NCBI RefSeq assembly: GCF_006345805.1
Contig: NC_043001.1
Location: forward strand, 47,368,001-47,432,000
Reading direction: 5' to 3'
Length of the DNA stretch: 64,000 nt
Origin: Octopus sinensis
Lineage: Eukaryota
Below the pieces are notes generated by a model that had not been told where the DNA came from, made no database searches, and saw only the letters and a program-made list of their open reading frames with translations. Both the position numbers and the translations under genes were made by a program. Shown here in pieces: positions 6,878-56,468 of the stretch. Position 1 is the first letter of the stretch, and each line of letters begins with the position of its first letter.

Positions 6878-6947
6878 ACTTTTTCTATTCCCTGTTTGTT
6901 TTCTACACCACCAGGCTTCGTCTTTTGTTTTATTTTTCGTGAATTCT

Positions 6948-7012
<65 letters not shown>

Positions 7013-8156: not shown

Positions 8157-8236
<80 letters not shown>

Positions 8237-9269
8237 TTGTCTGTCTGTACGTATGTGTGTGTGTGTGTGTGTGTGTGTATTCGCTTTTGTATGTTGCTTC
8301 AGATGAAACGTGTGTACATATACATAGCTATGGAAAGGCATTAAAAAAGATACGAGTTTTAGTCTTGTAAGGTAAAGTAACAACCAAACCAATTCACAGA
8401 ACAACCAAGTCACAGAACGTGTGTGAGAGTTAAATATTTATTTACGTATGAGTTCTTGCTTTTGTGCAAACACACACACTCTCACACACACCCACACTTA
8501 CATTATATATTTATATATATCCACTAACACATGAATACACACATACATAGACAAACACATTGACAAACACTTATAGTATTTTAAAACTTTTTATGATCTA
8601 AAAATACGTATTTTTCACTCTCTCTCTCTCTCTGTATATATATATATATATATATAGTATCGAATTCTTTATCAGATAACGCTTGAAACGTTGTTAACAT
8701 ATTCTCATATAGGTTAAATGCCTATACATTCTAATATATACATCCCTCTATAAATATATATTTATATAAGTATATTCATGTGTGAATATATATGTATATC
8801 ATACGTACATAGATTTATATTTATACATACACGAACACGTATGATGATACATTATAAATGTACGCACATACGAATAGTGTTACAGTAAGAATCTAATCTT
8901 ATCTTCTTCCACGGTAATCCTCTTATATAGTTTATCGCTTCAATTAAATTAGCATCTTCTGATACAAATGGCTGCCACACTGTAGTTGGATTCTTATTTA
9001 ATAAAATACTATTAAATCTCTCTCTCTCTCTCTCTCGTTATGTGTGTGTGCGTGCGTATATGCATATATGTGTGTACGTGCATGCATACATATATATATG
9101 TATATATGTATGTATGTATGTATATATGTAAGTATGTATGTATGTATGTAAGTATGTAAGTATGTATGCATATATGTATGTATGTATGTACATATATATA
9201 AACATGCAAGTATTGGGTACTCTTCGTTTTTGTATTTCCAAACATACACACACACACACATACACACAG

Positions 9270-10744: not shown

Positions 10745-13044
10745 GTAATGGCTTCAACTACATTTGTTGCCTAATATACTAGAACTTTAGGGGTTTTCAC
10801 TCTTAAAGCTGTTTTATATATTTCTCTGCATATGAGTTTTCAATTGTGAGTGTGTGTGTGTATTTATGTAAGTATTCCTCGAAGTTTACTTTTTAGGTTT
10901 GGCTAAATCAGAAAGTAATTCCGTGAGATAGAGAAATAATTGTATTATCTCTTATCTATTGTAAACGCAATATTCCTTAGACACCCAGGCAAGTTTCAAT
11001 GTAAGTGAGGCGTTTTCTTTTACAATTATTTTTACTTTTCCTCACGCTTTGCTAAATTCTAGCAAATTACAATTTTGTTGCAGTGAAGCAAGAAAACAAG
11101 TGGCAAAATTCTTCACCAAAAAAAGAAATAACAGCAACTCTTTGATGCTGTATACTACTATTACGTCTTATACAATATATATGCAAGCACGTATATATAA
11201 CTTGACAGACACAAAAGCTAAAACTATGGCAAGTTTTCTCAAGCCTTTTTGCGATGCCAACTGAGATTAACAGCTGGCGTTGCTCACACTTCTAAGAATA
11301 TGCGAGTCTATGGAGGAAACGGAATGGTTAATCAGAAGTTATCTATTCACAGCCAATGGCTAGCCCCCAAACAGACGTCCAGATTGAATGTATTTATTTA
11401 TTCTCCTTCTAGAGCCACCGACGATCATGCGCAAAGGTCAGAAAGTTTAAGACAGACAAGATGTTCGTAAGCTGACATAACATTTAGAATAGAAGAAGAA
11501 AGAAACAGAAGTGAAAATCGTGATAAGGCGGACGCGGGCAAGATAGAGTCAAGATATAGAACGAAGGATATACATATATAAACATACGTTCAGGCATCCG
11601 CTTTCTAACCTCCTCATCCTTGTTTCTCCCTCTATGCGTGCGAGCACGCACGCACACACACAGACGACCACATACACACACACTCACATATATTATACAT
11701 ATATAATATACGTATATATACATATACGTATATATATACATATACGTATATATACATATACTTATGTATATATGCATACATATTTGGATGCGTATATACA
11801 TACATTTACAAATATGAATTTATACATGCATACACACAGATATACGTGTGTATTATTTTCATGCGTAACTTCAAACGTATGCAAAAATACACAATGTGTA
11901 CGTGCATGTTTAATTTGCGTGTGTTCGTATATATATTTTGGCCAAATCTTTAATTTGACCGAACATTCAGAAGAACTCAATACTTATATAAATAACAATA
12001 AAGCAAAAGTTTATAACAAATGTAAATAATTTAAGCAACGCAACTATGCTTTCACCCAAAGTGGGATTCTCAGAAACCATAACACTTTGTATCTTTGGCT
12101 CGCCGTATAATTATTTAAGACATTTTTCAAGTGAGTATTTGTACCATTTTCGAATAAATATTAAGTCTGAAATACAGAAAGTTAGAAACAGATAATATTT
12201 TTAGCCGACAAATTCATTTGAAAAAAATGAGAAAGATCGCCAGAGAAGCTAATTATGTGACTTGCGAGCCTACTACAACCTCTCATGCAAATATATATAT
12301 GCTTATCCGTTTATGTACAACTATATACACACGCACGTTATGTTAATTCTTGCCTATTTTTCTCTCTTGTCAAATGACGTTATAATCTCTCTTATGACGT
12401 TTTCTTGGATTGGAATTTTATTTATTCATTATAGCTTTGTAAATTTTAACCATTATTTTTTTTTTCGAATATGGTGCAAAATACTTGGAATCGGCTGAAG
12501 CCCTTTTGTAATGATTATGCTACGTCTAACAAATCTAAAATTTTCAACCTCTAAGTGTAAGAGCAAAGATTTTTCACAATAACAAATGTATTACGCGCGC
12601 GTGTCCCTTTTATCGCCTTATTAGAAACCCATACGGTTATATCTACACACTCGAATCAGGGGAAGATAAAACACAAGAAAGAAGGGATGTTGCTGTTGTT
12701 GTTGTTGTTGCTGTTGTTTTTGTTATCATTAATGGTGATGGTGATGATGATGAAGATGAGGATGATGGTGATGATGATGATAGAACGAATTAAGAGTTAA
12801 AGAAACAGTAAAAGTAATGTAATGGACGGGAGAAGGAATGAGTTGACCATCAAGATAGCACTGCATGTTCTAAATGAAAGGCAATATGGAATGGAATGCC
12901 GGAAATCATAAAACCTTAATTTAGAACACGAAGATGGAAGATGTGGTTTATAAACTCATATTTGATAAACAAATTAAACAAAACTATAGAAACAAGTTGT
13001 TATTGATTAGCCATAGGTCAGACTTGACAGTGCAGATCTAATAT

Positions 13045-13611
13045 CCTTTCTACTATAGGCACAAGGTCTGAAATTTGGGGGAGGAGAATAGACGATTACA
13101 TCGATCCAAGTACTCAGCTGGTGCTTATTTTATCGATCTCGAAAGGATGTAAGGCAAAGTTGACCTCAGCGGAATTTGAATTCAGAACGTAAAGACGGGC
13201 AAAATACTGCTAAGCATTTTGCCTGGCATGCTAACGTTTCTTATTTCTTTATTGCCCACAAGGGGCTAAACATAGAGAGTACAAACAAGGATAGACAAAG
13301 AGATTTAGTCGATTAGATCGACCCCAGTGCGTAACTGGTACTTAATTTATCGACCCCGAAAGGATGAAAGACAAAGTCGACCTCGGTGGAATTTGAACTC
13401 AGAACGTAACGACAGACGAAATACCTATTTCTTTACTACCCACAAGGGGCTAAACACAGAGGGGACAAACAAGGACAGACAAACGGATTAAGTCGATTAC
13501 ATCGGCCCCAGTGCGTAACTGGTACTTAATTTATCGACCCCGAAAGGATGAAAGGTAAAGTGGACCTCAGAACGTAACGTCAGACGAAATACCGCTAAGC
13601 ATTTCGCCCGG
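13045..13611 (-). mobile_element. SINE family N trimer with 16 bp TSD
   Basis: Three head-to-tail core units; AGTGCAGATCTAATAT at 13029-13044 and 13612-13627. Confidence 0.92.
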
Positions 13612-15734
13612 AGTGCAGATCTAATATAAAGAGACACTCTAGCCGTGACTATCCGTCTCTCTGTGACTGCATTGTCCAATGTATCCTCTTTAAAAAAAAA
13701 ATCCAAAGTTTATTTCTTATACTCTTTGATAGTTCACCATTATTATAAAACATTCTGCAATCATTCCCCGCTTAATCTACCTCATCTCAATTAAATTGAT
13801 ATTCATAACCAAGGCCTTCTCTACCCACTGAGATGCACCAAACTATATCCATGCCCGTCGGAGGATTTGAGACCTGAAAACTGTAAAGTTAACGAAACAT
13901 TCGTTATTATTCAGTACTTCTTTCGTCTGTCCCTCTGTCAGTCTCTGTCTGTCTATCTGTCTCTCTCTCCCAGTTTACAGCTACATGAAATGAGGCATTT
14001 AACGTTTAAACGTTTTGGTCAATGTACGACCAGTGTTGAGAAACCAACTACCACCTTTTCGGTTCATAGGCTAACATCTTATCGACTTTGCCAGTTGTGG
14101 CAAGCTTAATATTATATTCTATATCAAAACAATAAAAATATTGTATATATTGGTTTATAAAAGAAATCCATCAAACTCCACAACATAAAATATTCCTGGA
14201 CACTATATTAGAAACTATATTCTAATAGTGTTAAGTGTACCGATTCTAATATTCCGATACTGTAGGGTGTACCGATCAAGAAACATCATCGTCTCTTCTT
14301 TTATGGTTGATTAAGTACTACAGTAAACGAAAATATTCCACTAATCTATTATCATAAGTTTAACCTAAAAAGGTTTATTATTATTATTACTTTAATTTTT
14401 ACATACATGCATAGCTAGACATATATGGAAATGAATGTCAAAGTTCTTGACGTTTGGCTTTTTGAAGATCATATTTAGAAAGAGAAACTAAGCCTAGCAT
14501 TTGGTTTCCCGACTATATCGCTATTAAGATATTTCTTTAAAGGAAATATTTTCAATCAACTCATATTCTTGCTAAACATCATAAAATCTGTTTTTTTGAG
14601 GATAAAAGCACACTCGTCCCCTTCAGCCACGTTAGTAAAAGTAAAGACAACTGCGAATTTACATAACACGCAAATGATTATTATGTATACAAAGCTGTAA
14701 ACACCCATGCCTACAAACAGACCTACAAACAGATATCGAACTACGCAAAAGCTGATAAAGGTGTTTATGGTTCTGTTAAATGGAACATCACCTGGGGATA
14801 GTTGGTGGCCCAAAACAAGTTTGAGGTTTATGAATATCTCTTCAATGATAAGCCCTCATATACATTAAATCACATAGTTTCACATATTATATCACATATG
14901 CATTACATCACAAGCGTTTCAAAGTTTTAACTTAACACCTGTACCATAAAACAAAAATGTGTACATTGAATCAGTATATCGAAAGTCTGCTATAAATGTT
15001 ATATCTTGATTGAAATTTTGAAGGAAAATATTAATTTATTCTTCTAGTTGATCAGTCATTGGACTACAGCTACATCGGGGCACCACCTTAAACTTAGTTA
15101 AAGACAATCTCTGACGATCTATTACGGTGCCCCAAAGACTAAACTTCCTTTTCAAGACCAGACAATACTTCAAATCTGATCAGTTTCTGTCCATCTGCAA
15201 AGCTCAAGAAAAGACTCACGTTGAAGCACTGTTCACACAGTTGAAACAGTGCTATTGTTACACACACTATATTCTAGACCAGATAAATACAGAATTTCAG
15301 TTGATTGTCAAAGTTTCCTTTGTCGCTATAACCAGATACAACATTTTCGAATCACTATTTTAACAGTGTTTGCTTTCCTGAACTGCCAAGCTACATAACT
15401 CCTTCACGCATATTTATCTAACAACAGTTTTCTTTTCTTCTCGTCACCTACTATGTTTCTCCACCGTAGTTCAACATGAAATATATCAACAAATCCTTTT
15501 TTTCTCAGAAATACACTCCCGGATCTCATCTCATCTCGTTTACTTTTTTCTTGCAGACAACGCTCTTGAAAAATTATCTAATGTACTATATATGTCGATG
15601 ATTACAGGTTATTAAGGATCTATAAAACAACCGACCTTTGCAATCAGGTGTCTCTATTATTCTGAGAAGTTGTTCTAATTACAACTGGTTTGCAAGGAAA
15701 CACACTGATCTTACTTGGTATCAACTCCATCAAA

Positions 15735-19958: not shown

Positions 19959-20117
19959 CGCAGGCATGACTGTGAGGTAAGAAGTTTGCATTCCGACAAC
20001 ATGGTTCGGTGTTCAGTCTCCCTGCGTGGCACTTTGGGCAAGTGTCTTCTACTATAGCCTCGTGCCGACCAAAGCCTTGTGAGTAGATTTGGTAAACGGA
20101 AACTGAAAGAAGCCTGT

Positions 20118-20189
<72 letters not shown>

Positions 20190-20650
20190 TATGTATATAT
20201 CATTATGTTAAACCGTTAATCCCTACACATTTTTTCTCTTTCTCTCTCTCTCTCCGTTTTTTGTTCTCTCTCCATTTTCCCTCCTCTCATCCCTTTCCGT
20301 CGAAGAATATAGGGTCGAAATGTCGAAGACTTTTCCGGTCTTCCTAAGCATCAAACTAATGCACCTGCTTGCTGTTCCATCACCTGTCTTCGTCTTTTGT
20401 TTTCTGTAAATTTGAACTTTATGTATGTGTGTGTGTGTGTGTATGTGATCCCACTGCTTGACAACCGGTATTGGTGTGTTTATGCCCTGTAACATAACGA
20501 TTCAGCAAAAAAGAGCGATAGAATAAGTACCAGGGTTTTTTTTAAAAAAAAAACAAGTACTGGGGTCGATTCATCCGACTAAAAGTTTTCCGAAGTGGTG
20601 CCCCATCATGGCCTCAGTTTAATGATTGAAACAAGTAAAAGATGAAAGAT
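19959..20650 (+). mobile_element. SINE family A, full bipartite copy with a nested Penelope-like fragment (~20230-20420) in its internal microsatellite
   Basis: Head 19959-20120, then (AT)n, a foreign insert, (GT)n and the 3' part 20448-20650. Confidence 0.8.
20293..20328 (+). ncRNA. Hammerhead-like motif, subfamily 1 (decayed helix II)
   Basis: CTTT-CCGTCGA-A-GAAT-ATAG-GGTC-GAAAT-GTC-GAAG. Confidence 0.4.
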
Positions 20651-22492: not shown

Positions 22493-22678
22493 CGTTTGGT
22501 CAAGGTGCCATGCATTGGGATGGAACCCGGGATGTTGCGTGTGGGAAAAGAAATTTTTAACCATTCTGATTCTATAACTTCATCTGTTATAGAACACAAA
22601 TAATGATAGAGCCTGACCAACCCAGATGTTTTACAATATGTAATTTGATATAACACGAAATTTTACATCATACAATCT

Positions 22679-22744
22679 TTTTTATAGGTATTAGGTCCAG
22701 TGTAAAGCAACTTTGCTTAACACTGGACCTAATAACCATAAAAA
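22679..22744. other. 66 bp hairpin (32 nt arms, 2 nt loop)
   Basis: TTTTTATAGGTATTAGGTCCAGTGTAAAGCAA-CT-TTGCTTAACACTGGACCTAATAACCATAAAAA; 29 of 32 positions are complementary. Confidence 0.9.
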
Positions 22745-23054
22745 ATGTAATAAATATGACTAATATAAATGCAAGCAGTTCATGCTGTTGCTTAGAACTA
22801 AGTCAACGCCGATCGAGCAGAACTATGACACAAAGCGTTCCAATAATGGTCATCCCGTCTTGTATACTTAAGATTACCGACTCTGCGGAGGATGTAAAAC
22901 TCTGTTGCCTTCCTTTTCCCACCTCCTCTCATCGAGACTTTGAAGAAGGACTATGTTCAAAATGTTGGATGCCCACCCGACTGACACGGCATCTCAGTGT
23001 ACGTGTTCTATTGGTTTTTCTATGTAAGCATATGTGTATGCATGCATATAATTA

Positions 23055-24908: not shown

Positions 24909-25292
24909 GCGTACGCATGTAGTTAAGAAAATTGCTTCCCAACCACGTGGCCTTGGGTTCAGTCCCACCACACAACACCTTGGGCAAGTGTCTTCTACCA
25001 TAGTCTCGGGTTGACCAATTCTAATACCTTATGAGTGAAACTGGTTGATGGAAGGTGTGGAATCTCATTGTGTGTATGTGTTCGTTTGTTTATTTGTTTC
25101 CTTACCACTGCTTCTCAATCGGTGTAGGTTTATTTACAACCCATAACTTAGCGGTTCGGTAAAATAATTTTGATATAAGTACCAAACATTAAAAAAACAA
25201 AACAAGTATTTTGGTCGATTTGTTAGATTAAAATCTTTCAAGGCGGTGCCCAAGCATGGCTGCAGTCCAATGATTGAAACAAGAGAAAGATA
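24909..25292 (+). mobile_element. SINE family A, full copy
   Basis: Head GGGTTCAGTCCCAC..CCTTGGGCAAGTGTCTTCTAC and 3' part AGGCGGTGCCCAAGCATGGCTGCAGTCCAATGATTGAAACAAG. Confidence 0.85.
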
Positions 25293-25480
25293 TTAAAGAA
25301 TATTTTTCTATGCGTTTTTTATTTTTATTGTATGAATGACTGGGCTCCAATGATTGTGATAAAGAACATATAACTATTATAACTTTTTATTATTATTTAT
25401 GGGGTAGTAGATTTCCACCGAGGTCAACTTTGCCTTTCATCATTTTAGCATCAATAAAATAAATATCAGTTGAATATTGA

Positions 25481-25758
25481 AGTCGACCCAGCACTTATGT
25501 TTTAAAACCTGGTATTTATTCCATCGGCTTGTTTTGCCGAACTGCTATGTTACGTAAAAAAAAAACAATAGCAGTTGTCAAGTGGTTGTAGGGAACAAAC
25601 ACAACGCAAACACAAACACACACACACGCACACGACAGGCTTCTTTCAGTTTCTGTCAGCTAAATCCACTCACAAGGTTTTGGTCACCCTGGAACTATAG
25701 TGGTAGACACTTGCTTAAAGTGCTGTGCAGTGGACTGAACCGGAGACCCATGGTTTGG
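25481..25758 (-). mobile_element. SINE family A, inverted relative to 24909
   Basis: Plus strand CTTCTTTCAGTTTCTGTCAGCTAAATCCACTCACAAGG..GGACTGAACC. Confidence 0.8.
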
Positions 25759-25805
25759 ATATTAAATAATTTTTTAAAAAGAATTTAGTTATTATCATTA
25801 TTATA

Positions 25806-25987
25806 GAAAGCGGCAGTTGGCAAAATCGTTACCACGCCGAACAAAATGCTTAGCGTCATTTCTTCCGGCTTCACATTCTAAGTTCAAATTTCGCTGAGGT
25901 CGACTACGTCTTTTAGCCTGTGCGTGTCGATAAAATAACCTTTTGTGTACTGGGGTCGATGTAACCGACTGCACCCCTTCCCCAAAC
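25806..25987 (+). mobile_element. SINE family N monomer
   Basis: AAAGCGGCAGTTGGCAAAATCGTTA..GTTCAAATTTCGCTGAGGTCGAC..ACTGGGGTCGATGTAACCGAC. Confidence 0.8.
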
Positions 25988-30512: not shown

Positions 30513-30517
30513 CAACC

Positions 30518-30700
30518 GAATCGTTAGCACGTCGGACAAAATGCTTAGCGACATTTCTTCTGGATCTTTACGTTCTCAGTTCAAACTCGCCGAAACCAAC
30601 TTCGCTATTTGTCTCTTCGGAATCGATAAAAAAAGTAGTAGTCAAGTGCTGGGGCGGATACGATCGATTTGCTTCCTCTTCTAACAATTTCTGGCCTAGA
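30518..30700 (+). mobile_element. SINE family N, degenerate
   Basis: GAATCGTTAGCACGTCGGACAAAATGCTTAGCG..TTACGTTCTCAGTTCAAACTCGCCGA. Confidence 0.75.
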
Positions 30701-30932: not shown

Positions 30933-31004
30933 TACATACATACATACATACATACATACATACATACATACATACATACATACATACATACATACATACA
31001 TACA

Positions 31005-32271
31005 TAGATATTGGACAAAATAATGGAAACACCTACCATCATAGCATCATAATTTTGAAATATCTATAAAACCGCCAAAAGCTTGTTTATTTTTGTGTTT
31101 TGATTTATTATTAGTGCTGCTTAATATGTTTTGCTAAAATTGCTGTTTCTTTTCAGATATCATCAGGAAATGGTATCATTAAAATGACAGATCTACCGGA
31201 CTTTCAAAGAGGTCAAATTGTTGGTGTACGTATGGCAGGCGCTAGCGTAACGAAAACAGTCGAAATATTTGGTGGATTAAATTCTGTCTCGAAAGTAATG
31301 ACAGCTTTTCAGAAAGAGAGAAAAACCTCCTCGTCGAAACAAAACTCCGGAAGAAAATCAAAAGTTTCAGATAGGGACCGTCGAACTCTTACGCAAATTG
31401 TCAGAAAGGATCACAAAAGTACAGTGCCCAAAATTACTGCAAAGCTTAATGACCACCATAAGAACCCAGTTTCCACAAAAACCGTTCGCCGGGAGCTGCA
31501 CAAAACTGGATTTCACAGGAGGGCAGCAATCAGAAAACCACTACTTCCAAAACCAAACTTCGCAAAGCGTTTAGAGTGGAGTAAAAACCTACAGAATTAG
31601 TCCCCAGAGCAGTGGAAAAATGTTATTCTCTCGGACGAGTTATCCTTTACCTTATTTCCGACAACCGACCGAATATACGTGTGGAGACAGCCGAAAGAAG
31701 CATTTCACTCAGACTGCCTTCTTCCAACTGTTAAAGATGGAGGAGGATCTGTGATGATCTGGTGGAGGGGGAGGGGCTATATCTTGGAAATCAGCCGAGC
31801 CAATGGTTTTCCTTCATGGCAGAATTAATAGTCAAGACTATTTAAGCCTTTTAACTGATCAAATTTATCTTATGGTTGCGGAACTGTTTCCAGAGAGAAA
31901 TGCAATCTTTCAGGATGATAGTGCACCAGTTCACACAGCTAAAGTTGTTACTGAATGGCACAAGGAACATTCTAGTGAAGTTGAACATATTATCTGGCCA
32001 CCACTGTCCCCAGATCTCAATATTATTGAACATTTACGGTGCACTTTAGGAAAACAAGGAAAGAGTCGATATCCTCCACCATCATCACTACAAGAACTGG
32101 AGACGGTTTTAGCTGAAGAATGGATAAAAATTCCTTTGGAAACAATTGAAACTTTGTACAAGTTCATACCTCGTAGAATTCAAGCTGTAATTACTGCCAA
32201 AGGCGGTCCAACCCCATATTAAAATATATTTGTTTGAAATTTTAAGGTGTTTCCATTATTTTGTCCAACCC

Positions 32272-32274
<3 letters not shown>
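31005..32274 (+). mobile_element. Near full-length Tc1 transposon with DD36E transposase pseudogene (31184-32222)
   Basis: TIR TTGGACAAAATAATGGAAACACCT at both ends. The transposase is interrupted by TAG at 31598-31600 and a 10 bp insertion at 31763-31772. Motifs: ILSDE, TVKDGGGSVMIW, FQDDSAPVH, WPPLSPDLNIIE. There are 36 residues between the second D and the E. Confidence 0.93.
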
Positions 32275-32321
<47 letters not shown>

Positions 32322-32384: not shown

Positions 32385-32950
32385 TGTGGGCACAGGACGT
32401 TATGAAACGTGTGCAACAAAAAGTACGAATCAAGAGTACATGGAACATGAACTATTCTTTCGAACAACGAAAGACACAAATGGAAAACAAAACAAACATA
32501 AAGAACGACCCTTCATCAGTTGTTGGCTGTTTTTCTAGTCTGTATTTCGAGCATTTAACAACAATATACGCTTTCGATAAAACAGTTGCTTCCGCAAAGC
32601 AAATTAAATAAATTTTGAGATTTTGCGGAGGGTCAAAATAGGTAATACAAACAGGACAGTGAAAACAAACAGGAAGGGCTGCTAAGCCTAAACGAAGTTG
32701 TGGTGGCGAAAGCGTAAATCAAGCTAGGACAGGAGACAAACAAGAACACGTCTTCCTTGTTCCAGCTACAACAGAGAGAAAGAAAGATGGCCGATGGTCA
32801 CGTGGGAGCCACGTGAGCAAAGGAGGAGAGTGATGGAGAATGAGCGACAGAGTAATAGGATAGAATAGTGGCAGAAGAGGAGGTAAAAGAATAAGAGAGA
32901 GAAAAACGAAAGAGTAAAAAGATCGCATAGAGTGCGCAACTTAAAGTTGG
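32385..32950 (-). repeat. Unclassified repeat, possibly a Penelope-like 3' region
   Basis: Pyrimidine-rich minus strand, contains CTGATGAAGGG and ends at an (AT)n tract like the other Penelope-like fragments. Confidence 0.35.
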
Positions 32951-32966
32951 TATGCGGTGCAGAAAC

Positions 32967-33063
32967 AAATGTTGTGATGTTCTATTAAAGCCTCCATCCT
33001 CGTATTATATTATATATCCTCAATCTTCGTGTTATATTATTCTTGCATGTGTGTGTGTGTGTG

Positions 33064-33130
<67 letters not shown>

Positions 33131-33857
33131 AACATTTACTTATAAAAGGAGTCGATAGTTTTGGTAGGATCAGATTTATCAAATATATACTGGTGATGAC
33201 ATCTCTGAAGGTGATTTTAACTGACAAACAAGGATTATAGAGTAAATACCATTGGACTAGCTCCGGCAGAGCAACGACCATCTCGTTGTAGAACTGAGAT
33301 GTACAATGAACAATCATGACCATGCTATGTAGAACTGTAAAACCGCAATGTCCAATTGTAATCTTCGTTTTAACAAGATTCCTGTCACAACCATCCCATC
33401 TAGCATTACATTATCCTATCTAATCGTCTAACTCTAAAGATAGTACGGATAATGTAATGCTAGATAGGATGGTTGTGACAGTAATCTTGTTAAAACGAAG
33501 ATTACAATTGAATATTGCGGTTTTACAGTTCTTATATAGCATGGTCATGATTGTTCATTGTACATCCCAGTTCTACAACGAGATGGTCGTTGCTCTGCCG
33601 GAGCTAGTCCAATGGTATTTACTCTATAATCCTTGTTTGTCAGTTAAAATCACCCTCAGAGATGTCATCACCAGTATATATTTGATAAATCTGAATCTAC
33701 CAAAACTATCGACTCCTTTTATAAGTAAATGTTTCGCTCTCACGCGCGCGCACACAAACACACACACACACACACACGCAAGAATAATATAATACGAAGA
33801 TGGAGGATATATAATATAACACGAGGATGGAGGCTTTAATAGTACATCACAACATTT
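32967..33857. repeat. Long inverted duplication (arms 32967-33416 and 33447-33857, 30 bp spacer)
   Basis: Mirror ORFs 32985-33323(-) and 33457-33792(+) give nearly the same translation. The arms differ by roughly ten point changes plus microsatellite length. Confidence 0.97.
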
Positions 33858-34176
33858 TTTAGATTTTAATTATTTATGTGGAAAGTAACACTAGCGATAG
33901 TCGAGGGATTACTGTACTCATCACAGCCTTGTTACTGTTATTGATATTGTTGTTGTTGTTGTTGTGTCTGCTGACTAACCTTGCTTGACAATGACGTAAA
34001 AAAAGAACATTCTGGAAGGTGACGACTTTTCTCGAAATGATTCAGAAAAATATTGCGAAAACCGTCTTTCTTACGCTACAACCGCCGCCGCAGCCAACTC
34101 AAATGCAAATACCAGCATACTTAATTACATATTTCTTTGTTTATTTTTAGTCTTTATTTATTTATTATTTATAATA

Positions 34177-35389: not shown

Positions 35390-35708
35390 ACGTGTAGTTA
35401 TGTATGTGGAATTGCAAAAGCAAGCGTAAAAGTCGGTGAATTGGCGGAGCCGGTATTTTATCTGAGTCTTGGCGTCCTGAGTTCAAATACTGCTGCGGCC
35501 TTCTTGGGAAGAGTCCAATCTGTTGCAAGCATTCCAACCAGAATTCTGGTTTATGGATACCTCCAACCCATCCTTACGAGTCTATGAAGTCGTGTAAATG
35601 ATCATAAAACACTACCCTTCCTGCCGACAAAGCAGTAAAAGAAAGGTTGAAAAAATAAGGAAATGAAAGAGAAGTGGAAGGTTTTTTAACAAAGAAGTTA
35701 CTGTTTTA

Positions 35709-36081
35709 CTCTTTTACTTGTTTCAGTCATTTGACTGTGGTCATGCTGGAGCACCACCTTTAGTCGAGTAAATCGACCCCAAGACTTATTCTTTGTAAGC
35801 CTAGTACTTATTCTATCGGTCTCTTTTGCCGAACCGCTAAGTTACGGGGACGTGAACACGCTAGTATCGGTTGTCAAGCAATGTTGGGGGACAAACACAG
35901 ACACACACATACATACATATATACGACGTGCTTCTTTCAGTTTCCGTCTACCAAATCCACTCACAAGGCTTTGGTCGGCCCGAGGCTATAGTAGAAAACA
36001 CTTGCCCTAGGTGCCACACAGTGGGACTGAATCCGGAACCATGTGGTTCGTAAGCAAGCTACTTACCACACAGCCACTCCT
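35709..36081 (-). mobile_element. SINE family A, best-preserved full copy
   Basis: Head, short internal CA/TA tract and 3' part are all intact. Confidence 0.92.
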
Positions 36082-36400
36082 AAAATTGGCGAAATATGAG
36101 TGAATGAAGCAGACAGTTAAAACTTATACTGAAAAATAAGAAAACGAATTTGAATAAACCGCAAATAGAGCTGTATAGTGTTAAATTTATACGGTTAATA
36201 CTACATTAACCTAAATTCGTTGCTTCATAGTCACCATTCATGTAATTAATTATATTCTTCAAAATATTCTTTAAAGCGTTTATTTAATTAGTCGTTATTT
36301 TACTTATTAATTAATGGTATTATAATCGCTTATGTTCTCAACCGCCATTTCACTTGGTTAAAGATTGATATAAGTGTTGTTTCCAGACAAATCATACTTT

Positions 36401-36910
36401 CGACCAAGGCGAAATTTGACCTCAGAACGTAACGGCAGACGAAATTACTATTTCTTTACTACCCACAACGGGCTAAACACAGAGAGGACAAACAAGGACA
36501 GACAAATGGATTAAGTCCATTATACCGACCCCAGTGCATAACTGATACTTATTTAATCGACCCCAAAAGGATGAAAGGCAAAGTCGACCTCGGCGGAATT
36601 TGAACTCAGAACGTAGCGGCAGACGAAATACCGCTAAGCATTTCGCCCGGCGTACTAACGATTCTGCCTGCTCGTCACCTTGATGATGATGATCATCATC
36701 ATGGTTTTAAATTTTGGCACAAGGCCAGCAATTGTGGGGGAGGATGGAAGCCGATTACATCGACTCCAGTGATCAACTAGTACTTGTTTTAGCGACTCTA
36801 ACAGAATAAAAGGCAAAGTCAACCTCGGCGAAATTTGAACTCAGAATATAAAGCCAGATGAAATGCCGCAAAGCATTTTGTCTCGTGTGCTAACAATTCT
36901 GTTTGCTCGC
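36401..36910 (-). mobile_element. SINE family N: tail-A unit with partial second unit (36401-36677) plus tail-B monomer (36704-36910)
   Basis: Same core and junction sequence as the 13045 trimer. Confidence 0.85.
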
Positions 36911-36917
36911 GGGCTTG

Positions 36918-36968
<51 letters not shown>

Positions 36969-39285: not shown

Positions 39286-39775
39286 AATATTTTTTAAACT
39301 GACTTCCCCCCAGGCATCGTAATTTCGAAAATTTTAATTAACATAACCCGTCTATTACGTAACAACGTTTTAAACTTCCTACCCCTATTACAATTTCTTA
39401 CTCTTTCTATAACCCCTCCTCCTACATTTCTAGTCTCCCTACAATTTTATATCTCTCTCAATTTCATACATCCCCAATATATCTTCTTTCACTCCCCATC
39501 TAATTTTTTTAAGAAATGAGTAATATTTTTTAAAACTGACTTCCCCCCAGGCATCGTAATTTCGAAAATTTTAATTAACATAACCCGTCTATTACGTAAC
39601 AACGTTTTAAACTTCCTACCCCTATTACAATTTCTTACTCTTTCTATAACCCCTCCTCCTACATTTCTAGTCTCCCTACAATTTTATATCTCTCTCAATT
39701 TCATACATCCCCAATATATCTTCTTTCACTCCCCATCTAATTTTTTTAAGAAATGAGTAATATTTTTTAAAAACT
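39286..39775. repeat. Near-perfect 237 bp tandem duplication
   Basis: GACTTCCCCCCAGGCATCG at 39301 and 39538; AATATTTTTTAAA(A)CT at all three junctions. Confidence 0.95.
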
Positions 39776-40710
39776 AAATTTAATACGATTTGCAATGATT
39801 TGAAAGACGAAACTAGAGCATTCAGGAATTTTTTCAGCGTTATCCCTCATGTGTGTGTGATTGTGGTTGTGTTGACGTGAATATTACTATGTTGTGTGAA
39901 GTCAATGGTTGATTGCAAGTGTTTGTGAATTCATACATGTGTACATTCGTGCTCCGTGTGAACGTGTGTGCATTGTAGGTGTTATGTTTTACTGTGAAGT
40001 GGAAATGTGGTAAAGTGTGAAAGTGGAATATATATGTGTGTGGATGTATGTGCGTGTGTAGGCAGTGTGTATGGAGGTGGGGATACCGAAGGAGGTGTTA
40101 TGTATAGACATGTATATAGCATGTATGTATGTATGTATGTATGTATGTATGTATGTATGTATGCATGTATATGTATCCGTTTAATTGCCATTCCATGCTT
40201 GTAGTTGGAGGGCTTCCGTGGTTCAATAACTCTAAAAGCGATGTAGTCGGGAGTCTAGTGCTCCTGGTAGAGCCATCTATAGCGGTGAGATCGAAGAAGA
40301 GAATCCAGAGTTAATAAGCTCAGCGACCCTCCAAGACCCCGACGGAAGGCAGACAACAACAACGCTCGATTGCAATAACGTTTGAACTGGTACAGAGGGT
40401 TTATTTTCCTTCGGATCATTTAAGAAGGCGTTACTCAAGACTTCAAACAAATCAGCGCCAGTCCGTTCCAATTTCATTAGCTGAAAATGCCTGTATATGC
40501 GACGAGAAAATGGTCCTAAAACCAAATTGTGTGAACAACCTGCAAAAAAAAAACAACAACAAAAAACAACACCCACCCTCACCTCATAGAAATAACAAAA
40601 AAACTGCTCATATTTTCTCCAATTGAGAGAAATTGAAACTCTCAGACACAAGAAAGAGCCAATAACAACGATATATGCATCATATTTTTGTGTGTTTTAC
40701 GCGGTCTTGA

Positions 40711-41043
40711 AGGGTTGAGTCGAACAAATCGACCTAAATAAGTATTTATTTCTTAAGTTTGGTACTTATTCTATCGATTCTCTCTTACGAACCTCTAAGT
40801 TATGGAGACGTAAACAAACCGGTGACAGTTGTTAATCAGTTGTGGGGTGAACACAAACAAATGCAGATGCCTACATGCATGCACACACGCATACACACGA
40901 CGGGCTTGCATACAGTTTCCGTCTGCCAAATTCGTGGGTCCGGGGTCATAGTAAAAACAACAGTTACCCAAAGTGCCGCAGAGTGGGACCGAACTCGAAA
41001 CCACGTGATTGTAAAGAAAGCTTATAACCACGTAGCTATGCCT
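40711..41043 (-). mobile_element. SINE family A, degenerate full copy
   Basis: TTACCCAAAGTGCCGCAGAGTGGGACCGAACTCG head; GAACCTCTAAGTTATGGAGACGTAAACA 3' part. Confidence 0.8.
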
Positions 41044-42077: not shown

Positions 42078-42137
<60 letters not shown>

Positions 42138-42139
<2 letters not shown>

Positions 42140-42541
42140 TCCTTTCTACTAAAGGCACAAGGCCTGAAATTTGGGGGGGGGAGGGGAGTAATTGATTGCA
42201 TCGATCCAAGTATTTCACTGGTGCTTAATTCATCGACCCCGAAAGGATGGAAAGCGAAGTCGACTTCGGCGGAATTTGAACTCAGAACGTAGCGTCGGGC
42301 GAAATACTTATTTCTTTACTACCCACAAGGGGCTAAAGACACAGAACGGACAAACAAGGACAGACAAACAGATTAAGTCGATTATATCGACCTCAGTACG
42401 TAACTGGTACTTATTTAATCGACCCCGAAAGGATAAAAGGCAAAGTTCACCTCGGCGGAATTTGAACTCAGAACGTAGGGGCAGACGAAATACCGCTAAG
42501 CATTTTGTCCAGTGCACTAACGATTCTTCTAGTTCGCCGCC
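42138..42541 (-). mobile_element. SINE family N dimer (tail A unit + tail B unit)
   Basis: Two cores with internal TTTCTTTACTACCCACAAGGGGCT; ends against (AAT)n. Confidence 0.88.
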
Positions 42542-42580
42542 TTTTCATTAACCACAAAGGTCTACATTAAATAATAATAA

Positions 42581-44960: not shown

Positions 44961-45031
44961 TTTATTAAGTTATGAACAGACCGAACTCTTCACACACACA
45001 CACACACACATCTGTTTCTCTCTTTTTCTCC

Positions 45032-45062
<31 letters not shown>

Positions 45063-45229
45063 CATACATACACTGGTATGCACTTTATCCACTTCGAAAG
45101 GGCGCTAGAAACCCCACCTCTTTCTCTCTTAAAAATATATGTGTATGTATGTGTATATGTATATATGTATATTCAGAATACTGTGATACTGTGAACATAC
45201 ACACATGCATGCATACATACATACATACA

Positions 45230-45261
<32 letters not shown>

Positions 45262-46201
45262 CACATACACACATGCACATATATTTTATGAGAGTGAGAG
45301 AGGGGTGATTGTAGCGTCCCTTTGAAGAAGCAAAGTGCATACCAGTATTTAATCCAGTACACTCCCTCGCTTATACATTCGAGAAGTTGTCCCAAATTTA
45401 GAAATGAATATTATCCACAGACTGAGAGACATCTAAACTTCAAGGCAGTAATCGATAATTCAGTTGGAATAGAATAAAGAAATGAAGCATGTGTGTGTCT
45501 GTGGAGAGAGAGAGAGAGGGAAAGAGATAGAGAGATAGAGAGAAAGAGAGAGGGGAGAGGGGGGAGTGAATGTGGGTAATAGGCCGTGAGATAGGAAGTA
45601 ATTACATTTGGATACTTAATTAGTAAATGTGTATTGCTTGAGATTCCCTTATTTAATCTCCTGGTCGATGACTCAATCTTGCCCCGAGTGAGTCGTTCCC
45701 AGCTCTGAGTCAGTTACTCGAGCTGAAAAAAACAAAAAGGGTTCGTCAGACGAAAACGTATTGAAAATGTCCTTTCAATGAGAAAATGGGAACACCTGCC
45801 GGGACAGGATTTCTACTAACATGCAATATCAGAAAATTATAAGTCAGACAACAACAAAAACATTATTGTTGTTGCTGTTGTTTTTATTATTATTATTATC
45901 ATTATTACCACCAAAAATAATGATAATTGTAAAAATAGTTCTTTTTATGCCGGTTGGAACCGGTGTTATTTAGCGGAATAAAGGGAGAAAGTTGTAAGTT
46001 TCAAAGCGGTTCCAACTGAGAAATTTGAATGAAACTGAGTTGCAGTTTTATTTTGGTAACAACCTGCCCCTTCTCAGCCACTTTTATAATGAAATACGAA
46101 ATCAATAATAACTGAGTAAGCATTAAACTTGATGCTTCTAGGAAAGTCTTATACGATGATTTTGCCAAAGTCATTGATTAACTTTATAGCACTGTCTGGA
46201 A

Positions 46202-46224: not shown

Positions 46225-47230
46225 GATTTTGGATGCCTTAGTTCATATTAGTGGAAGAAACTATATACCAGATGCTGGGAGTTAGCAGTCGCCTACAAGA
46301 AGCCGATCAGGAATCGGGACTTATGTAATATTTACTTTACATAAGCGATTTTGCGGAGACAGCGAAGGCATCGGAAATTTTTTCTGCAATTGAGTGGCAA
46401 ATCGCCAACAATTTTAGAAATTTTTACACCAAAATATAATCGTATGTTCATAGTGGGTATTTGTATGCATACGCATTTCTCACGTGCATTGCCGTAGAAT
46501 ATAGTATGCTGGTAGCTTGGCAATAACCTGTCTAGACATGCACAGTAAGGTCACACTCGCGGGTGCACGCATGCGTATACAGCGCACTGTATCGGCCGTT
46601 TTGCTGGCAATTTTGGTCTCAAATGAGTGGTCTGTGATTATGGATGCAGCTTTAAAACTCTATTATTCACAGTGCAATTTGATTAAGCAGACTTTCCTTT
46701 TTGCAAGTGGTCTTGTACGCACGTGTGATTTCATCAACTTCAATTGGTCTCAGACGATTTACCGTTACAGAGAAATTCATCATCTTCGTAATCTAATGTA
46801 AGTTTACATACACTGTTTTATATTATTGTGCGTTAGGGTTATGATTACTCGATCATAGTTATTTTCAAAGTAAAATAAAGCTATCAAGTCGAATAATTTT
46901 GCCAAATCGAATGTGAAGATGTAGTTTATCAATTACCATTAGTTGCACGGTTGACACCATGTAAATTTCTGTTTTTTAGAATGAATCCAAGAAAGAAAAT
47001 GGAATATGACATATCCTTCTTGAAATTTGGCTTTACTGTTATAATTTCAAATGGGAGGATACCACTATTCGGTCAAAAAGCGATAATACTTTCAAGGAGT
47101 GCTTTTTGTGCAAAACATTATACAAAACGGAATATTAGGTTGTTTTTTTTTAAATTTCGACACAAAACCACACGTTTAAAAAAAAACAAGAATGCGATCA
47201 GCACGAGCTATTGAGGAAAAGCTCTATGCG

Positions 47231-50835: not shown

Positions 50836-51555
50836 ATGAATGAATAACCAAGAGTGGATCTCTATAAGTTGGGTCGTGTTATCTGTATACACTGCAAGAA
50901 TATTATGTGCAAACACTTCTGCACAGATTTTGATATTCAGCTGATATTGTTTGAGTATGCAAATTAGATCGACCTAACAAGGTGCCTAAATTTAAGTACC
51001 TAATTCAACCGAATCTTATATATATATATATATATGTCAATAAAATCTAAGTAAACACTTTGTAGTGCTATATATATATATACAAAGCTAAGTGTAGCTA
51101 CACCGCAACAACAATAAAAAGATCAATAAAAACCGTAACTAGAACATTTTATATTTGCAATCATTAGGCACAGATACGAGGGTGCTATCATAATTAGACC
51201 AGCGGACACAGAAAAAGTATAAAACCGTTGATGAATTATTGAAAGGAATATTATTGATAAATGTTATTGCTGAGTAACATAAATAAATAAGTAAATAAAT
51301 AAAGCGGAGTAGAAAGAAACAAAGATGTAAAAAGAAATGTGCATGCTGTGCCATTTCTATTAATTATGACGTAATTATATAAACATGAGTGAAGTAGATA
51401 AAGTTGGTGGAGGAAGGGTAAATCTATCAGTCTCTTTCAATAACATCAAAGGCAACTTTGTGAAAAATGAGACTAGCCAATGTTTTATAACGCGAGCTGT
51501 ACTTTTGCTGGAAGCAATCAAATGTTTTAGTCTTATGAAAGAACCAACATAAAAG

Positions 51556-51766
51556 CGGCGAGCTGGCAGACACGTTAGCACGCTGGGCGAAGTGCGTAGC
51601 CGTATTTCGTCTGTCTTTACGTTCTGAGATCAAATTCCGCCGAGGTCGACTTTGCCTTTCATCCTTTCGGAGTTCGATAAATTAAGTACCAGTTGTGTAC
51701 TGGGGTCGATCTAATCGACTGGCCGCTTCCCCAAAAATTTCAAGCCTTGTGCCTAGAGTAGAAAAG
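51556..51766 (+). mobile_element. SINE family N monomer (tail B) with 18 bp TSD
   Basis: AAAGAACCAACATAAAAG (51538-51555) and AAAGAACCAACTTAAAAG (51767-51784), one mismatch. Confidence 0.9.
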
Positions 51767-51808
51767 AAAGAACCAACTTAAAAGATGCACTTCGTACGGA
51801 CTTTTAAG

Positions 51809-52222: not shown

Positions 52223-52580
52223 CAGTCATTGGACTGAAACCATGCTTGAGTATAGCCTTTAAAGGGTTTTAGGTCGAACAAATCGACCTCAGTACATTAC
52301 ATTTTCTATCGGATTTTTTTTTACCGATCTGCTAAGTTACGAGGATGTAAACAAACTAACACCGGTTGTCAAGTAGTAGGATGACAAACATAAAGACATA
52401 CATATATAGACACCACACACACACACACACATGTATATATATGACGGGCGTCTTTCAGTTTCTGTCTACCAAATTCATTTACATGGTATTGGTCGGGTCG
52501 GAGCTAGATATTTGCTCAAGGACTGAACCCAAAACCACGTGGTTACAAATCAATTTTCATAACCACACAGCCATGCCTAT
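52223..52580 (-). mobile_element. SINE family A, degenerate full copy
   Basis: GACGGGCGTCTTTCAGTTTCTGTCTACCAAATTC..GGACTGAACCC..AACCACACAGCCATGCCT. Confidence 0.8.
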
Positions 52581-56254: not shown

Positions 56255-56468
56255 GGGTTTCAAATTTTGGCACAAGACAGCAATTTTATTGGTGGGGAGT
56301 AAGTCGATTACATCGACCCCCATTACTCAACGGGTATTTATTTTGTCGATCCTGGAAAAGTGAAACCTACATGTTGGCGGAATTTGAATTTAGAACGTAA
56401 ACCTTTAGAACGTAAGGCCGCAAAATATTTTGTTCGGCATGCTAATAATTCTGCCAGCTCACTGCCTT
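56255..56468 (-). mobile_element. SINE family N monomer
   Basis: TTTCAAATTTTGGCACAAG..GTCGATTACATCGACCCC..TTCTGCCAGCTCACTGCC. Confidence 0.8.

What the first reader, a model, noticed from the sequence alone, without database searches (positions are those of the whole stretch)
32967..33857. ~890 bp quasi-palindrome with 30 bp spacer
Seen: two arms of about 410-450 bp that are nearly identical, including a mirrored microsatellite, with no TSD or transposon-type termini. Known: such palindromes are unstable in DNA, and if transcribed they give long dsRNA, a substrate for Dicer (hpRNA/endo-siRNA) and ADAR, which is very active in coleoid cephalopods. Inference: it formed by fold-back template switching. 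The ~10 arm differences argue against a pure read artefact.
Basis: partly seen in the sequence, partly recalled or inferred. Interest (0 to 1): 0.7.

Follow-up and report, generated by a model that had tools for sequence, protein, structure and literature searches.

The report
Real 897-bp non-coding DNA quasi-palindrome
The reported hairpin-shaped stretch of DNA is real and not a sequencing error, but it looks like an ordinary old inverted duplication in gene-poor, repeat-rich DNA, with no sign so far that it does anything.

Summary
Window 32964-33860 (897 bp) is a quasi-palindrome with a 458-bp left arm (32964-33421), a 16-nt loop and a 423-bp right arm (33438-33860). Outside the microsatellite the arms differ by 14 substitutions (9 transitions, 5 transversions) and two small indels over 371 columns (K2P 0.039). 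The left arm also carries a (GA)~31 expansion that the right arm lacks. This is mutation-like divergence, not read error, so a fold-back read artefact is unlikely.

The arm has no other copy in the 64 kb, although two dispersed repeat families have 7-10 copies each. It matches no Rfam family, tRNA, Pfam domain or protein. The only candidate target-site duplication is a 3-bp AGA. The window also holds two further unrelated palindromes (45072-45346 and 22678-22745).

Best reading (about 0.5): a several-million-year-old, one-off local inverted (fold-back) duplication, neutral by default. Main rival (about 0.3): a low-copy foldback/MITE-type transposon. Copy number in the host genome, transcription, small RNAs and editing could not be tested here.

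The host is not identified, and named relatives of the neighbouring transposons are all arthropods, so the cephalopod/ADAR framing is unverified. If the host is a mollusc, published surveys find no endo-siRNA pathway. Ordinary; low interest.

The parts
32964..33421 (.). Left arm of the quasi-palindrome (458 bp)
   Evidence: Gapped local alignment against the reverse complement of the right arm; ungapped inverted-repeat blocks I1, I2 and I13.
33422..33437 (.). Central unpaired loop, 16 nt (AATCGTCTAACTCTAA). The ungapped spacer is 33417-33446 (30 nt) and includes the 6-bp inverted repeat CTATCT/AGATAG and a 4-bp TACG bulge.
   Evidence: MFE structure; centre sequence; no similarity to long-read adapters recalled from memory.
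33438..33860 (.). Right arm of the quasi-palindrome (423 bp)
32986..33039 (.). Two tandem 27-bp subrepeats near the outer end of the left arm (81% alike)
   Evidence: Direct-repeat family D9.
33784..33837 (.). The mirrored two tandem 27-bp subrepeats near the outer end of the right arm (85% alike)
   Evidence: Direct-repeat family D8.
33048..33127 (.). Left-arm microsatellite: (TG)9 at 33048-33065, then (GA)30.5 at 33067-33127. The GA run is expanded in this arm only and forms an internal bulge of about 57 nt in the hairpin.
   Evidence: TRF; alignment gap of 40 columns; MFE structure.
33738..33779 (.). Right-arm counterpart of the microsatellite: degenerate CTCTC-AC-(GC)4-(CA)n. Only the CA/TG part mirrors the left arm.
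   Evidence: Sequence; alignment; mismatch list.
32961..32963 (.). AGA immediately outside the left arm: one half of the only candidate target-site duplication
   Evidence: an exactly adjacent direct repeat of 3 bp or more occurs in 2.8% of random position pairs; allowing +/-5 bp of slop, 74% of random pairs do as well.
33861..33863 (.). AGA immediately outside the right arm: the other half of the candidate 3-bp duplication

Best explanation
This is a genuine germline quasi-palindrome, made by a single inverted (fold-back) duplication of about 440 bp of local non-coding sequence.

Inferred mechanism: a 3' end, either at a stalled fork or at a resected break, folded back on a short inverted microhomology. 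That microhomology is now the CTATCT...AGATAG pair around the 16-nt loop. The end copied its own strand backwards for about 440 nt and then rejoined the original template, which inserted an inverted copy next to its source without loss of flanking DNA.

The ancestral unit already carried the two 27-bp subrepeats and a (TG)n(GA)n microsatellite. Since the duplication the arms have drifted apart by about 3.9% (roughly 2% per arm), the (GA) run has expanded in one arm, and a 4-bp indel has arisen near the centre.

It encodes nothing and belongs to no known RNA family, so by default it is neutral. Only if a transcript happens to cross it would it form a dsRNA hairpin of about 420 bp (longest perfect run 87 bp) that ADAR, or Dicer where an siRNA pathway exists, could act on.

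Shown: the structure, the divergence spectrum, single-copy status within the window, and the lack of coding or RNA-family content. Inferred: the fold-back mechanism, the age, and neutrality.
For: - Structure and significance.
- Arm differences are 14 substitutions (9 transitions, 5 transversions) against only 2 small indels in 371 columns, K2P 0.039, with independent microsatellite remodelling. This indicates real, aged divergence.
- There is no other copy of the arm's unique 80-bp and 310-bp parts anywhere in the 64 kb, even at word size 7. Two dispersed families have 7-10 copies each in the same window.
- The immediate flanks are unique.
- No TSD of 4 bp or more.
- A very short loop centred on a 6-bp inverted repeat matches the snap-back geometry described for palindromic duplication: 5-9 bp inverted repeats with short spacers (PMC7999016). 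Template switching is known to create reverse-complement repeats in one event (PMC8794818).
- Two further unrelated single-locus palindromes of different ages lie in the same window: 45072-45346 at about 77% arm identity, and 22678-22745. That points to a recurrent local process rather than one mobile family.
- No gene, RNA family or domain is present: Rfam, ARAGORN, Pfam, protein searches.
Against: - Copy number in the host genome could not be measured, because none of the searchable DNA collections holds animal genomes. Pattern scans and exact ORF look-ups were empty but uninformative. A family with hundreds or thousands of copies would usually show no second copy in 64 kb.
- The exactly adjacent AGA/AGA has only about a 3% chance expectation, so it could be a real 3-bp TSD.
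- Paired 27-bp subterminal repeats resemble transposase-binding subrepeats.
- Documented template-switch events are mostly under 100 bp, much shorter than these arms.
- The 4-bp bulge next to the central 6-bp repeat needs a second event under the simple snap-back model.
- No outgroup locus shows a single-arm ancestor.
Confidence: 0.5

Rival explanations
1. It is a low- or moderate-copy non-autonomous DNA transposon of the foldback/hairpin-MITE type. The element is essentially two long terminal inverted repeats joined by a short loop, and it inserted here with a 3-bp target-site duplication (AGA).
For: - Sharp, symmetric outer ends.
- A direct repeat AGA exactly adjacent on both sides, chance about 2.8%.
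- Two tandem 27-bp subrepeats close to each terminus, as in many elements with subterminal binding sites.
- The surroundings are transposon-rich: a Tc1-like element at about 30960-32315, a second transposase remnant at 3459-4127, and abundant dispersed repeats.
- Palindromic repeats of this kind are known and are heavily edited in frog (PMC5625713).
Against: - No second copy or fragment in 64 kb.
- No TSD of the lengths or sequences typical of the common animal superfamilies (TA, TTAA, TWA, 8-9 bp). AGA does not fit the TWA preference of PIF/Harbinger; this point rests on my own knowledge of the superfamilies.
- The termini (AACAAATGTTGTG...) match no canonical terminal motif that I can recall; no repeat library was available to test this.
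- No related ORF calls were found in 5.8 billion proteins, which include ORF-called megabase-scale eukaryotic contigs.
Confidence: 0.3
2. It is an assembly or sequencing artefact: a fold-back chimeric long read (or a fold-back join of two haplotypes) built into the contig.
For: Fold-back reads are a documented artefact, at about 0.55-0.6% of ONT genomic reads (PMC12870357). Whole-genome amplification also creates palindromic chimeras (PMC6218980). No raw reads were available to check.
Against: - The arms differ by Ts-biased substitutions, not the indel-type errors of raw long reads. The microsatellites differ in structure as well as length.
- Polishing a fold-back of one molecule would make the arms identical.
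- The palindrome is short, lies inside the contig and has unique sequence on both sides. Artefactual fold-backs instead run symmetrically to the read ends (PMC12870357).
- The loop has no similarity to SMRTbell or ONT adapters, which I recalled from memory.
- HiFi data show virtually no fold-backs (PMC12870357).
- A divergence of 3.9% is high for two haplotypes.
Confidence: 0.07
3. It is two independent head-to-head insertions of the same dispersed repeat (an inverted-Alu-type pair).
For: This is the commonest source of dsRNA-forming inverted repeats in many animal genomes (PMC5625713). The window is repeat-rich.
Against: - The arm is not a member of any repeat family seen in the window.
- The arms begin and end at exactly the same positions and meet at a 16-nt loop.
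- Neither arm has its own flanking duplication or a terminal tail; the microsatellite lies 80 bp inside the outer end.
Confidence: 0.05
4. Whatever its origin, the locus is a functional hairpin-RNA gene: a source of endo-siRNAs (hpRNA) or a dedicated ADAR substrate.
For: The stem of about 420 bp, with an 87-bp perfect run, is in the size range of Drosophila hpRNAs, whose stems of several hundred bp are diced into siRNAs (PMC12553114). The hairpin forms on either strand. A minority of intergenic inverted duplicates in mammals are expressed (PMC5398296).
Against: - No transcription evidence is obtainable here.
- The arm has no similarity to any gene or protein that it could target, nor to anything else in the window.
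- The arm divergence shows no sign of pairing being maintained: every one of the 14 differences breaks or weakens a pair.
- The Rfam miRNA hits are generic hairpin matches on both strands, far below threshold (62.7 bits against a gathering score of 139).
- If the host is a mollusc, endo-siRNAs were not detected in 32 species (PMC12479628).
Confidence: 0.08

Closest known systems
Snap-back / fold-back inverted duplications and replication template-switch mutations (Butler, Deng and Tanaka models reviewed in PMC7999016; Loytynoja & Goldman PMC5453318; PMC8794818)
   Same: An inverted copy lies directly beside its template. The spacer is very short and centred on a short inverted microhomology. 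There is no target-site duplication of transposon type, and the structure is a single locus.
   Different: Documented template-switch mutations are mostly tens of bp, and snap-back palindromic duplications in yeast or cancer cells run to chromosome scale. Here the copy is about 440 bp with both flanks retained, which needs a second, return switch or an end-joining step. No ancestral single-arm state was observed.
Foldback elements and hairpin-forming MITEs (for example the palindromic Harbinger-derived repeat of Xenopus noted in PMC5625713)
   Same: Almost the whole unit is two long inverted repeats. It has subterminal tandem subrepeats, no coding capacity, and a size under 1 kb.
   Different: No second copy was seen, there is no canonical TSD (only AGA), and there is no recognisable terminal motif. 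Family membership is untested because no host genome or repeat library was available.
Drosophila hpRNA loci (endo-siRNA hairpins; PMC10317233, PMC12553114)
   Same: An inverted duplication giving an RNA hairpin with a stem of several hundred base pairs.
   Different: hpRNAs derive from, and target, protein-coding genes, and they are defined by Dicer-2/AGO2-dependent 21-nt siRNAs. Here no gene-derived sequence was found and no expression data exist. The host may also lack the pathway (PMC12479628).
Inverted Alu pairs and other ADAR-edited inverted repeats (PMC5625713)
   Same: A close-spaced, about 96% identical inverted repeat of roughly 300-450 bp per arm, which is the preferred ADAR substrate geometry if it is transcribed.
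   Different: The arms are not copies of a dispersed family, as far as the window shows, and they arose together rather than by two insertions.

Membership tests
Fold-back (snap-back / template-switch) inverted duplication | Inverted copy immediately adjacent to its template, with a short spacer | tested here: met
   The arms 32964-33421 and 33438-33860 are separated by a 16-nt loop.
Fold-back (snap-back / template-switch) inverted duplication | Short pre-existing inverted microhomology at the centre that primes the fold-back | tested here: inconclusive
   CTATCT...AGATAG (6 bp) brackets the loop, but it cannot be told apart from the innermost part of the arms, and a 4-bp bulge (TACG) separates it from the rest of the right arm.
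Fold-back (snap-back / template-switch) inverted duplication | Unique locus, with a single-arm ancestral state in relatives | not testable with these tools
   There is no second copy in the window. No host or sister-species genome could be reached.
Foldback / MITE-type DNA transposon | Terminal inverted repeats and no coding capacity | tested here: met
   This is trivially met by any palindrome.
Foldback / MITE-type DNA transposon | Target-site duplication of superfamily-typical length or sequence | tested here: inconclusive
   Only a 3-bp AGA lies exactly adjacent (2.8% by chance). There is no TA, TTAA, TWA or direct repeat of 4 bp or more within +/-5 bp.
Foldback / MITE-type DNA transposon | Multiple dispersed copies with the same ends | tested here: inconclusive
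   There are no extra copies in 64 kb, whereas two other families have 7-10. The genome-wide count could not be obtained.
Foldback / MITE-type DNA transposon | Terminal motif matching a known superfamily or autonomous partner | not testable with these tools
   No repeat library (Dfam/Repbase) is available. The arms are unrelated to the neighbouring Tc1-like element.
hpRNA (endo-siRNA hairpin) locus | Inverted repeat folding into a stem of hundreds of bp | tested here: met
   MFE -659 and -676 kcal/mol, z -61 and -76. The longest perfect run is 87 bp (33210-33296).
hpRNA (endo-siRNA hairpin) locus | Arms derived from, and complementary to, a target gene | tested here: not met
   There are no protein relatives of the arm's only long stop-free frame, no Pfam domain, and no other similar sequence in the window. 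Targets outside the window were not searchable.
hpRNA (endo-siRNA hairpin) locus | Transcribed and processed into 21-22-nt Dicer-dependent duplexes | not testable with these tools
   No RNA data. The literature reports no endo-siRNAs in 32 molluscs (PMC12479628), and the host taxon is unknown.
Known miRNA / Rfam RNA family | Score at or above the family's gathering threshold | tested here: not met
   The best hit is MIR5512 at 62.7 bits against a gathering score of 139, found on both strands. There are no matches at gathering level in the whole window.
Long-read fold-back / chimeric assembly artefact | Arms identical after polishing, or differing by random indel-type errors | tested here: not met
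   14 substitutions (Ts:Tv 9:5) against 2 indels, plus a structurally different microsatellite.
Long-read fold-back / chimeric assembly artefact | Adapter remnant at the turn | tested here: not met
   The best local score against SMRTbell and ONT adapter sequences is 5-8. The adapters were recalled from memory.
Long-read fold-back / chimeric assembly artefact | No independent reads spanning both arms and both flanks | not testable with these tools
   No read data. The window's ORFs are absent from the public protein/contig index, so no second assembly could be fetched.
Inverted pair of dispersed repeats (IRAlu type) | Each arm is an independent copy of a dispersed family with its own insertion signature | tested here: not met
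   The arm is not repeated in the window, and neither arm has its own TSD or tail.

The most novel reading that the evidence does not exclude
The three unrelated palindromes in one 64-kb window, two of them built around mirrored microsatellites (32964-33860 and 45072-45346), could mark a recurrent, microsatellite-associated fold-back duplication process in this genome. Such a process would continually seed long dsRNA-forming loci. The youngest one, described here, would then be an expressed hairpin feeding ADAR hyper-editing or a small-RNA pathway.
Probability: 0.1. Interest if true: 0.5.

Novelty: new member of a known kind. Interest (0 to 1): 0.2.

Why it matters
On its own the locus matters little. 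It is one more long inverted repeat in non-coding DNA, a class known to be common and mostly without function. Its value is practical.

- It is a clean, dated example (about 4% arm divergence) of a close-spaced palindrome that has persisted despite the expected fragility. That makes it a usable test locus for palindrome stability, by looking for presence/absence or centre-deletion polymorphism in populations.
- If the host turns out to be a heavy RNA editor, or to have an siRNA pathway, it is a ready-made candidate dsRNA source.
- The co-occurrence of three palindromes in 64 kb suggests that a genome-wide census in the host could say whether fold-back duplication is unusually active there.

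Tried and rejected
1. Search for other copies of the arm. BLAST of the whole unit against the window returned only microsatellite hits. The unique 80-bp and 310-bp parts at word size 7 matched only the partner arm.
2. Public DNA. Exact scans with invariant 22-25-mers of the arm in JGI metagenome contigs (twice) and IMG/VR found nothing. These collections are not expected to hold the host genome, so the negative carries little weight.
3. Reaching an independent assembly through exact ORF look-up. None of 10 ORFs in and around the palindrome, including two clean ATG ORFs of the Tc1-like element, is in the 15-billion-protein index.
4. Arm as a gene fragment. The word-indexed search found nothing. 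The exhaustive phmmer search gave two hits that are spurious: P0024 is a translated 92-aa tandem repeat in which one 27%-identical match is counted 13 times, and P0025 is a GPCR at E 2.5e-4. The Pfam hits are only the (GA)n-encoded 'ERER' run.
5. RNA families. The sub-threshold miRNA hits are generic hairpin or microsatellite matches on both strands. Nothing reaches gathering level, and there are no tRNAs.
6. Link to the neighbouring Tc1-like element. The element was bounded at about 30960-32315 by its TIR matches to ENA contigs. It ends about 650 bp before the palindrome and shares no sequence with it, so this idea was rejected.
7. 'Empty site' search. The flanks 32390-32963 and 33861-34150 have no paralogue in the window.
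8. Host identification. Two transposase fragments gave only 70-82% relatives, mostly on anonymous ENA contigs, with named hits from an amphipod, a sea spider and a cockroach. A Pfam scan of 150 stop-free segments found no host gene. The microsatellite spectrum was uninformative. The taxon remains unresolved.
9. Adapter in the spacer: none.

Full report
**1. The observation**

Reading 32700-34100 and the repeat finder show three collinear inverted-repeat blocks:
- 33123-33331 / 33533-33741: 209 nt, 98% complementary.
- 33331-33416 / 33447-33532: 86 nt, 95%.
- 32964-33090 / 33734-33860: 127 nt, 87%.

A gapped local alignment of the left half against the reverse complement of the right half joins them into one palindrome: left arm 32964-33421, right arm 33438-33860, with 393 matches, 25 mismatches and 45 gap columns. 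Forty of the gap columns and ten of the mismatches lie in the microsatellite.

The left arm has (TG)9 followed by (GA)30.5 at 33067-33127. The right arm mirrors the TG/CA part but has only a degenerate CTCTC-AC-(GC)4 stretch where the GA run should be.

Each arm carries two tandem 27-bp subrepeats near its outer end (families D8 and D9).

The ungapped spacer is 30 nt. A further 6-bp inverted repeat (CTATCT/AGATAG) with a 4-bp bulge reduces the loop to 16 nt.

The structure is far beyond chance. The self-BLAST E-value is 0.0. The RNA fold is -659 kcal/mol against -205 +/- 7.5 for dinucleotide shuffles, z = -61; the other strand gives -676 kcal/mol, z = -76.

**2. Real or artefact?**

Outside the microsatellite the arms differ at 14 substitutions (9 transitions, 5 transversions) and two indels (1 bp and 4 bp) over 371 aligned columns, giving K2P = 0.039.

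That is the spectrum of accumulated point mutation. It is not the indel-dominated spectrum of raw long-read error. A fold-back of one molecule would also be polished to identity.

The microsatellites differ in structure, not only in length. The palindrome is short, lies inside the contig, and is bounded by sequence that is unique in the window on both sides. Documented fold-back read artefacts instead turn at the read midpoint and run to the read ends, make up about 0.55-0.6% of ONT genomic reads, and are virtually absent from HiFi data (PMC12870357).

The loop has no similarity to SMRTbell or ONT adapters, which I recalled from memory. I put the artefact reading at about 0.07. Only raw reads can close it.

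**3. What the arm is not**

- It matches no Rfam family. The best hits are generic miRNA hairpin matches on both strands at 60-63 bits, against a gathering score of 139. Nothing reaches gathering level in the whole window.
- There is no tRNA-like head.
- The one long stop-free frame through the arm (111-112 aa, the same frame in both arms) has no relatives in the word-indexed search of 5.8 billion proteins.
- The exhaustive phmmer search of 1.84 billion representatives gave only two hits, both spurious. P0024 is a translated 92-aa tandem repeat in which one weak 27% match is counted 13 times, and P0025 is a GPCR at E 2.5e-4.
- The Pfam hits are only the (GA)n-encoded 'ERER' run.

So the arm is not a recognisable gene fragment, unlike the arms of Drosophila hpRNA loci.

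**4. Surroundings**

The window is AT-rich (about 35% GC), and microsatellites cover about 10% of it.

It has no detectable host gene. Among 150 non-low-complexity stop-free segments, only Tc1-type transposase domains register.

A frameshifted Tc1-like element lies upstream. Pfam gives HTH_Tnp_Tc3_2 at 1.9e-14 and DDE_3 at 1.4e-9. Alignment to two ENA contigs bounds it, with its inverted termini, at about 30960-32315. It ends about 650 bp before the palindrome and shares no sequence with it.

A second transposase remnant lies at 3459-4127.

Two dispersed repeat families have 7-10 diverged copies each in the window. The palindrome arm has none, so it is not a member of a family of comparable abundance.

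**5. Transposon or one-off duplication?**

I scanned every boundary offset within +/-5 bp for flanking direct repeats. The best is 3 bp (AGA), which 74% of random position pairs equal or beat. There is no TA, TTAA, TWA or longer duplication.

However, AGA sits exactly adjacent to the alignment-defined ends on both sides, and that happens in only 2.8% of random pairs. A 3-bp duplication of arbitrary sequence is produced by only a few rare animal superfamilies, and AGA does not fit the TWA preference of PIF/Harbinger; both points rest on my own knowledge. The AGA is therefore about as improbable under 'transposon' as under 'chance', and it decides nothing.

The subterminal 27-bp subrepeats lean slightly towards a transposon.

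Three things lean towards fold-back duplication:
- The loop is very short and centred on a 6-bp inverted repeat.
- There are no other copies.
- The same window holds two further, unrelated, single-locus palindromes of different ages. One is at 45072-45346, with arms of about 100 bp, about 77% identity in the unique part, and a mirrored (TATG)n/(CATA)n core. The other is 68 bp, at 22678-22745.

The geometry matches published models. Inverted repeats as short as 5-9 bp with short spacers can prime snap-back synthesis and palindromic duplication (PMC7999016). Replication template switching creates reverse-complement repeats in a single event (PMC8794818, PMC5453318).

I therefore favour a one-off local fold-back duplication (about 0.5) over a low-copy foldback/MITE element (about 0.3). 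The decisive test is a BLAST of the arm against the host genome and its relatives, which could not be run. The searchable DNA collections do not contain animal genomes (searches were empty), and the window's own ORFs are not in the public protein/contig index.

**6. Age and stability (inference)**

K = 0.039 between the arms means about 2% change per arm. At neutral rates of a few 10^-9 per site per year, a figure that I am assuming, the palindrome is several million years old, or older if the arms have gene-converted.

Long, similar, close-spaced inverted repeats are expected to be fragile (PMC7999016). Here three things all lower the chance of hairpin or cruciform extrusion and may explain its survival: the bulge of about 57 nt from the one-sided (GA) expansion, the central 4-bp asymmetry, and the 4% mismatch.

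**7. Function**

Nothing shows that the locus is transcribed.

If a transcript crosses it in either direction, it will form a hairpin of about 420 bp with perfect runs of up to 87 bp (33210-33296). That is a good ADAR substrate in any animal, because editing is concentrated in dsRNA-forming repeats across Metazoa (PMC5625713). It would be a Dicer-2 substrate only where an endo-siRNA pathway exists (PMC12553114).

All 14 arm differences break or weaken pairs. There is no sign of selection to keep the stem.

**8. The host**

The nearest relatives of both transposase remnants are 70-82% identical and lie mostly on anonymous ENA contigs, some of them megabases long (ERZ21867824, ERZ22157276, ERZ25067582). 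The only named relatives are arthropods: Trinorchestia, Pycnogonum and Blattella.

This is weak evidence, because transposons move between lineages, but it matters for the interpretation.
- If the host is a mollusc, a survey of 32 species including Octopus bimaculoides found no endo-siRNAs (PMC12479628). Octopus is also reported to be unusually rich in long, near-perfect dsRNA-forming loci (PMC5625713), which makes the locus ordinary there.
- If the host is an arthropod, the siRNA route is open, but the ADAR-in-cephalopods argument falls away.

**9. Verdict**

This is a real, aged, non-coding quasi-palindrome, and it is a new instance of a well-known kind. Interest is low (0.2). The most novel reading still open is a recurrent, microsatellite-linked fold-back process that seeds expressed dsRNA loci. 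I give that about 0.1.

Noticed in passing
window 45072-45346 (plus 45011-45065 / 45489-45543): A second, older quasi-palindrome with left arm 45072-45170 and right arm 45245-45346. The unique outer part of about 60 bp is about 77% identical, the inner arms are a mirrored (TATG)n/(CATA)n, and the spacer is 74 bp (self-inverted BLAST E 1.9e-22). It is flanked further out by mirrored (TC)n and (GA)n runs. It is not repeated elsewhere in the window and is unrelated in sequence to the main palindrome.
   Followed up: partly
window 22678-22745: A small 68-bp near-perfect palindrome (88% self-complementary, E 1.5e-17), with arms of about 33 bp (TTTTTTATAGGTATTAGGTCCAGTGTAAAGCAA...). It could be a tiny MITE or a hairpin.
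   Followed up: no
window ~30960-32315 (+): A degenerate, frameshifted Tc1-like DNA transposon with recognisable inverted termini. Pfam gives HTH_Tnp_Tc3_2 at 1.9e-14 and DDE_3 at 1.4e-9. It is 84% identical at the nucleotide level to ENA contig ERZ17090559:NODE_631457 (L002) and 79% to ERZ21867824:ctg99217l (L001).
   Followed up: yes
window 3359-4293 (+): A second transposase remnant (ORF pieces 3459-3707 and 3795-4127; no Pfam hit at 0.01). It has 144 relatives at 55-82% identity, mostly on megabase-scale ENA contigs (ERZ25067582, ERZ22157276). The named relatives come from the sea spider Pycnogonum litorale and the cockroach Blattella germanica.
   Followed up: partly
window 1935-2194, 13039-13617, 25789-25986, 30514-30697, 36400-36937, 42134-42544, 51545-51768, 56256-56464, 57869-58270: An abundant dispersed repeat family of about 170-400 bp, 70-89% identical, in both orientations (SINE- or MITE-like; unclassified). 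A second family lies at 19960-20643, 24918-25290, 25480-25744, 35704-36081, 40706-41031, 52298-52496 and 60197-60886.
   Followed up: no
window 5018-6672 / 6633-8281; 39286-39535 / 39522-39772: Two young tandem direct duplications: 1.65 kb at 98.2% identity and 250 bp at 99.6% identity.
   Followed up: no
window 46897-47211 (+): A stop-free segment containing '...MEYDISFLKFGFT...', which I recall as reminiscent of hAT-derived (ZBED/GTF2IRD2-like) transposase N-termini. There was no Pfam hit at 0.001, so this is a resemblance recalled from memory only.
   Followed up: no
window 33004/33031 versus 33820/33793: Within the two 27-bp subrepeats the A/G difference is swapped between the arms: the left arm has outer A and inner G, and the right arm has outer G and inner A. 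This may be a trace of conversion or misalignment between the subrepeats.
   Followed up: no
window 37644-37688/37831-37875; 52801-52869/53141-53209; 63284-63338/63659-63713: Three more close-spaced short inverted-repeat pairs (45-69 bp, 74-84% identical, spacers 143-321 bp).
   Followed up: no
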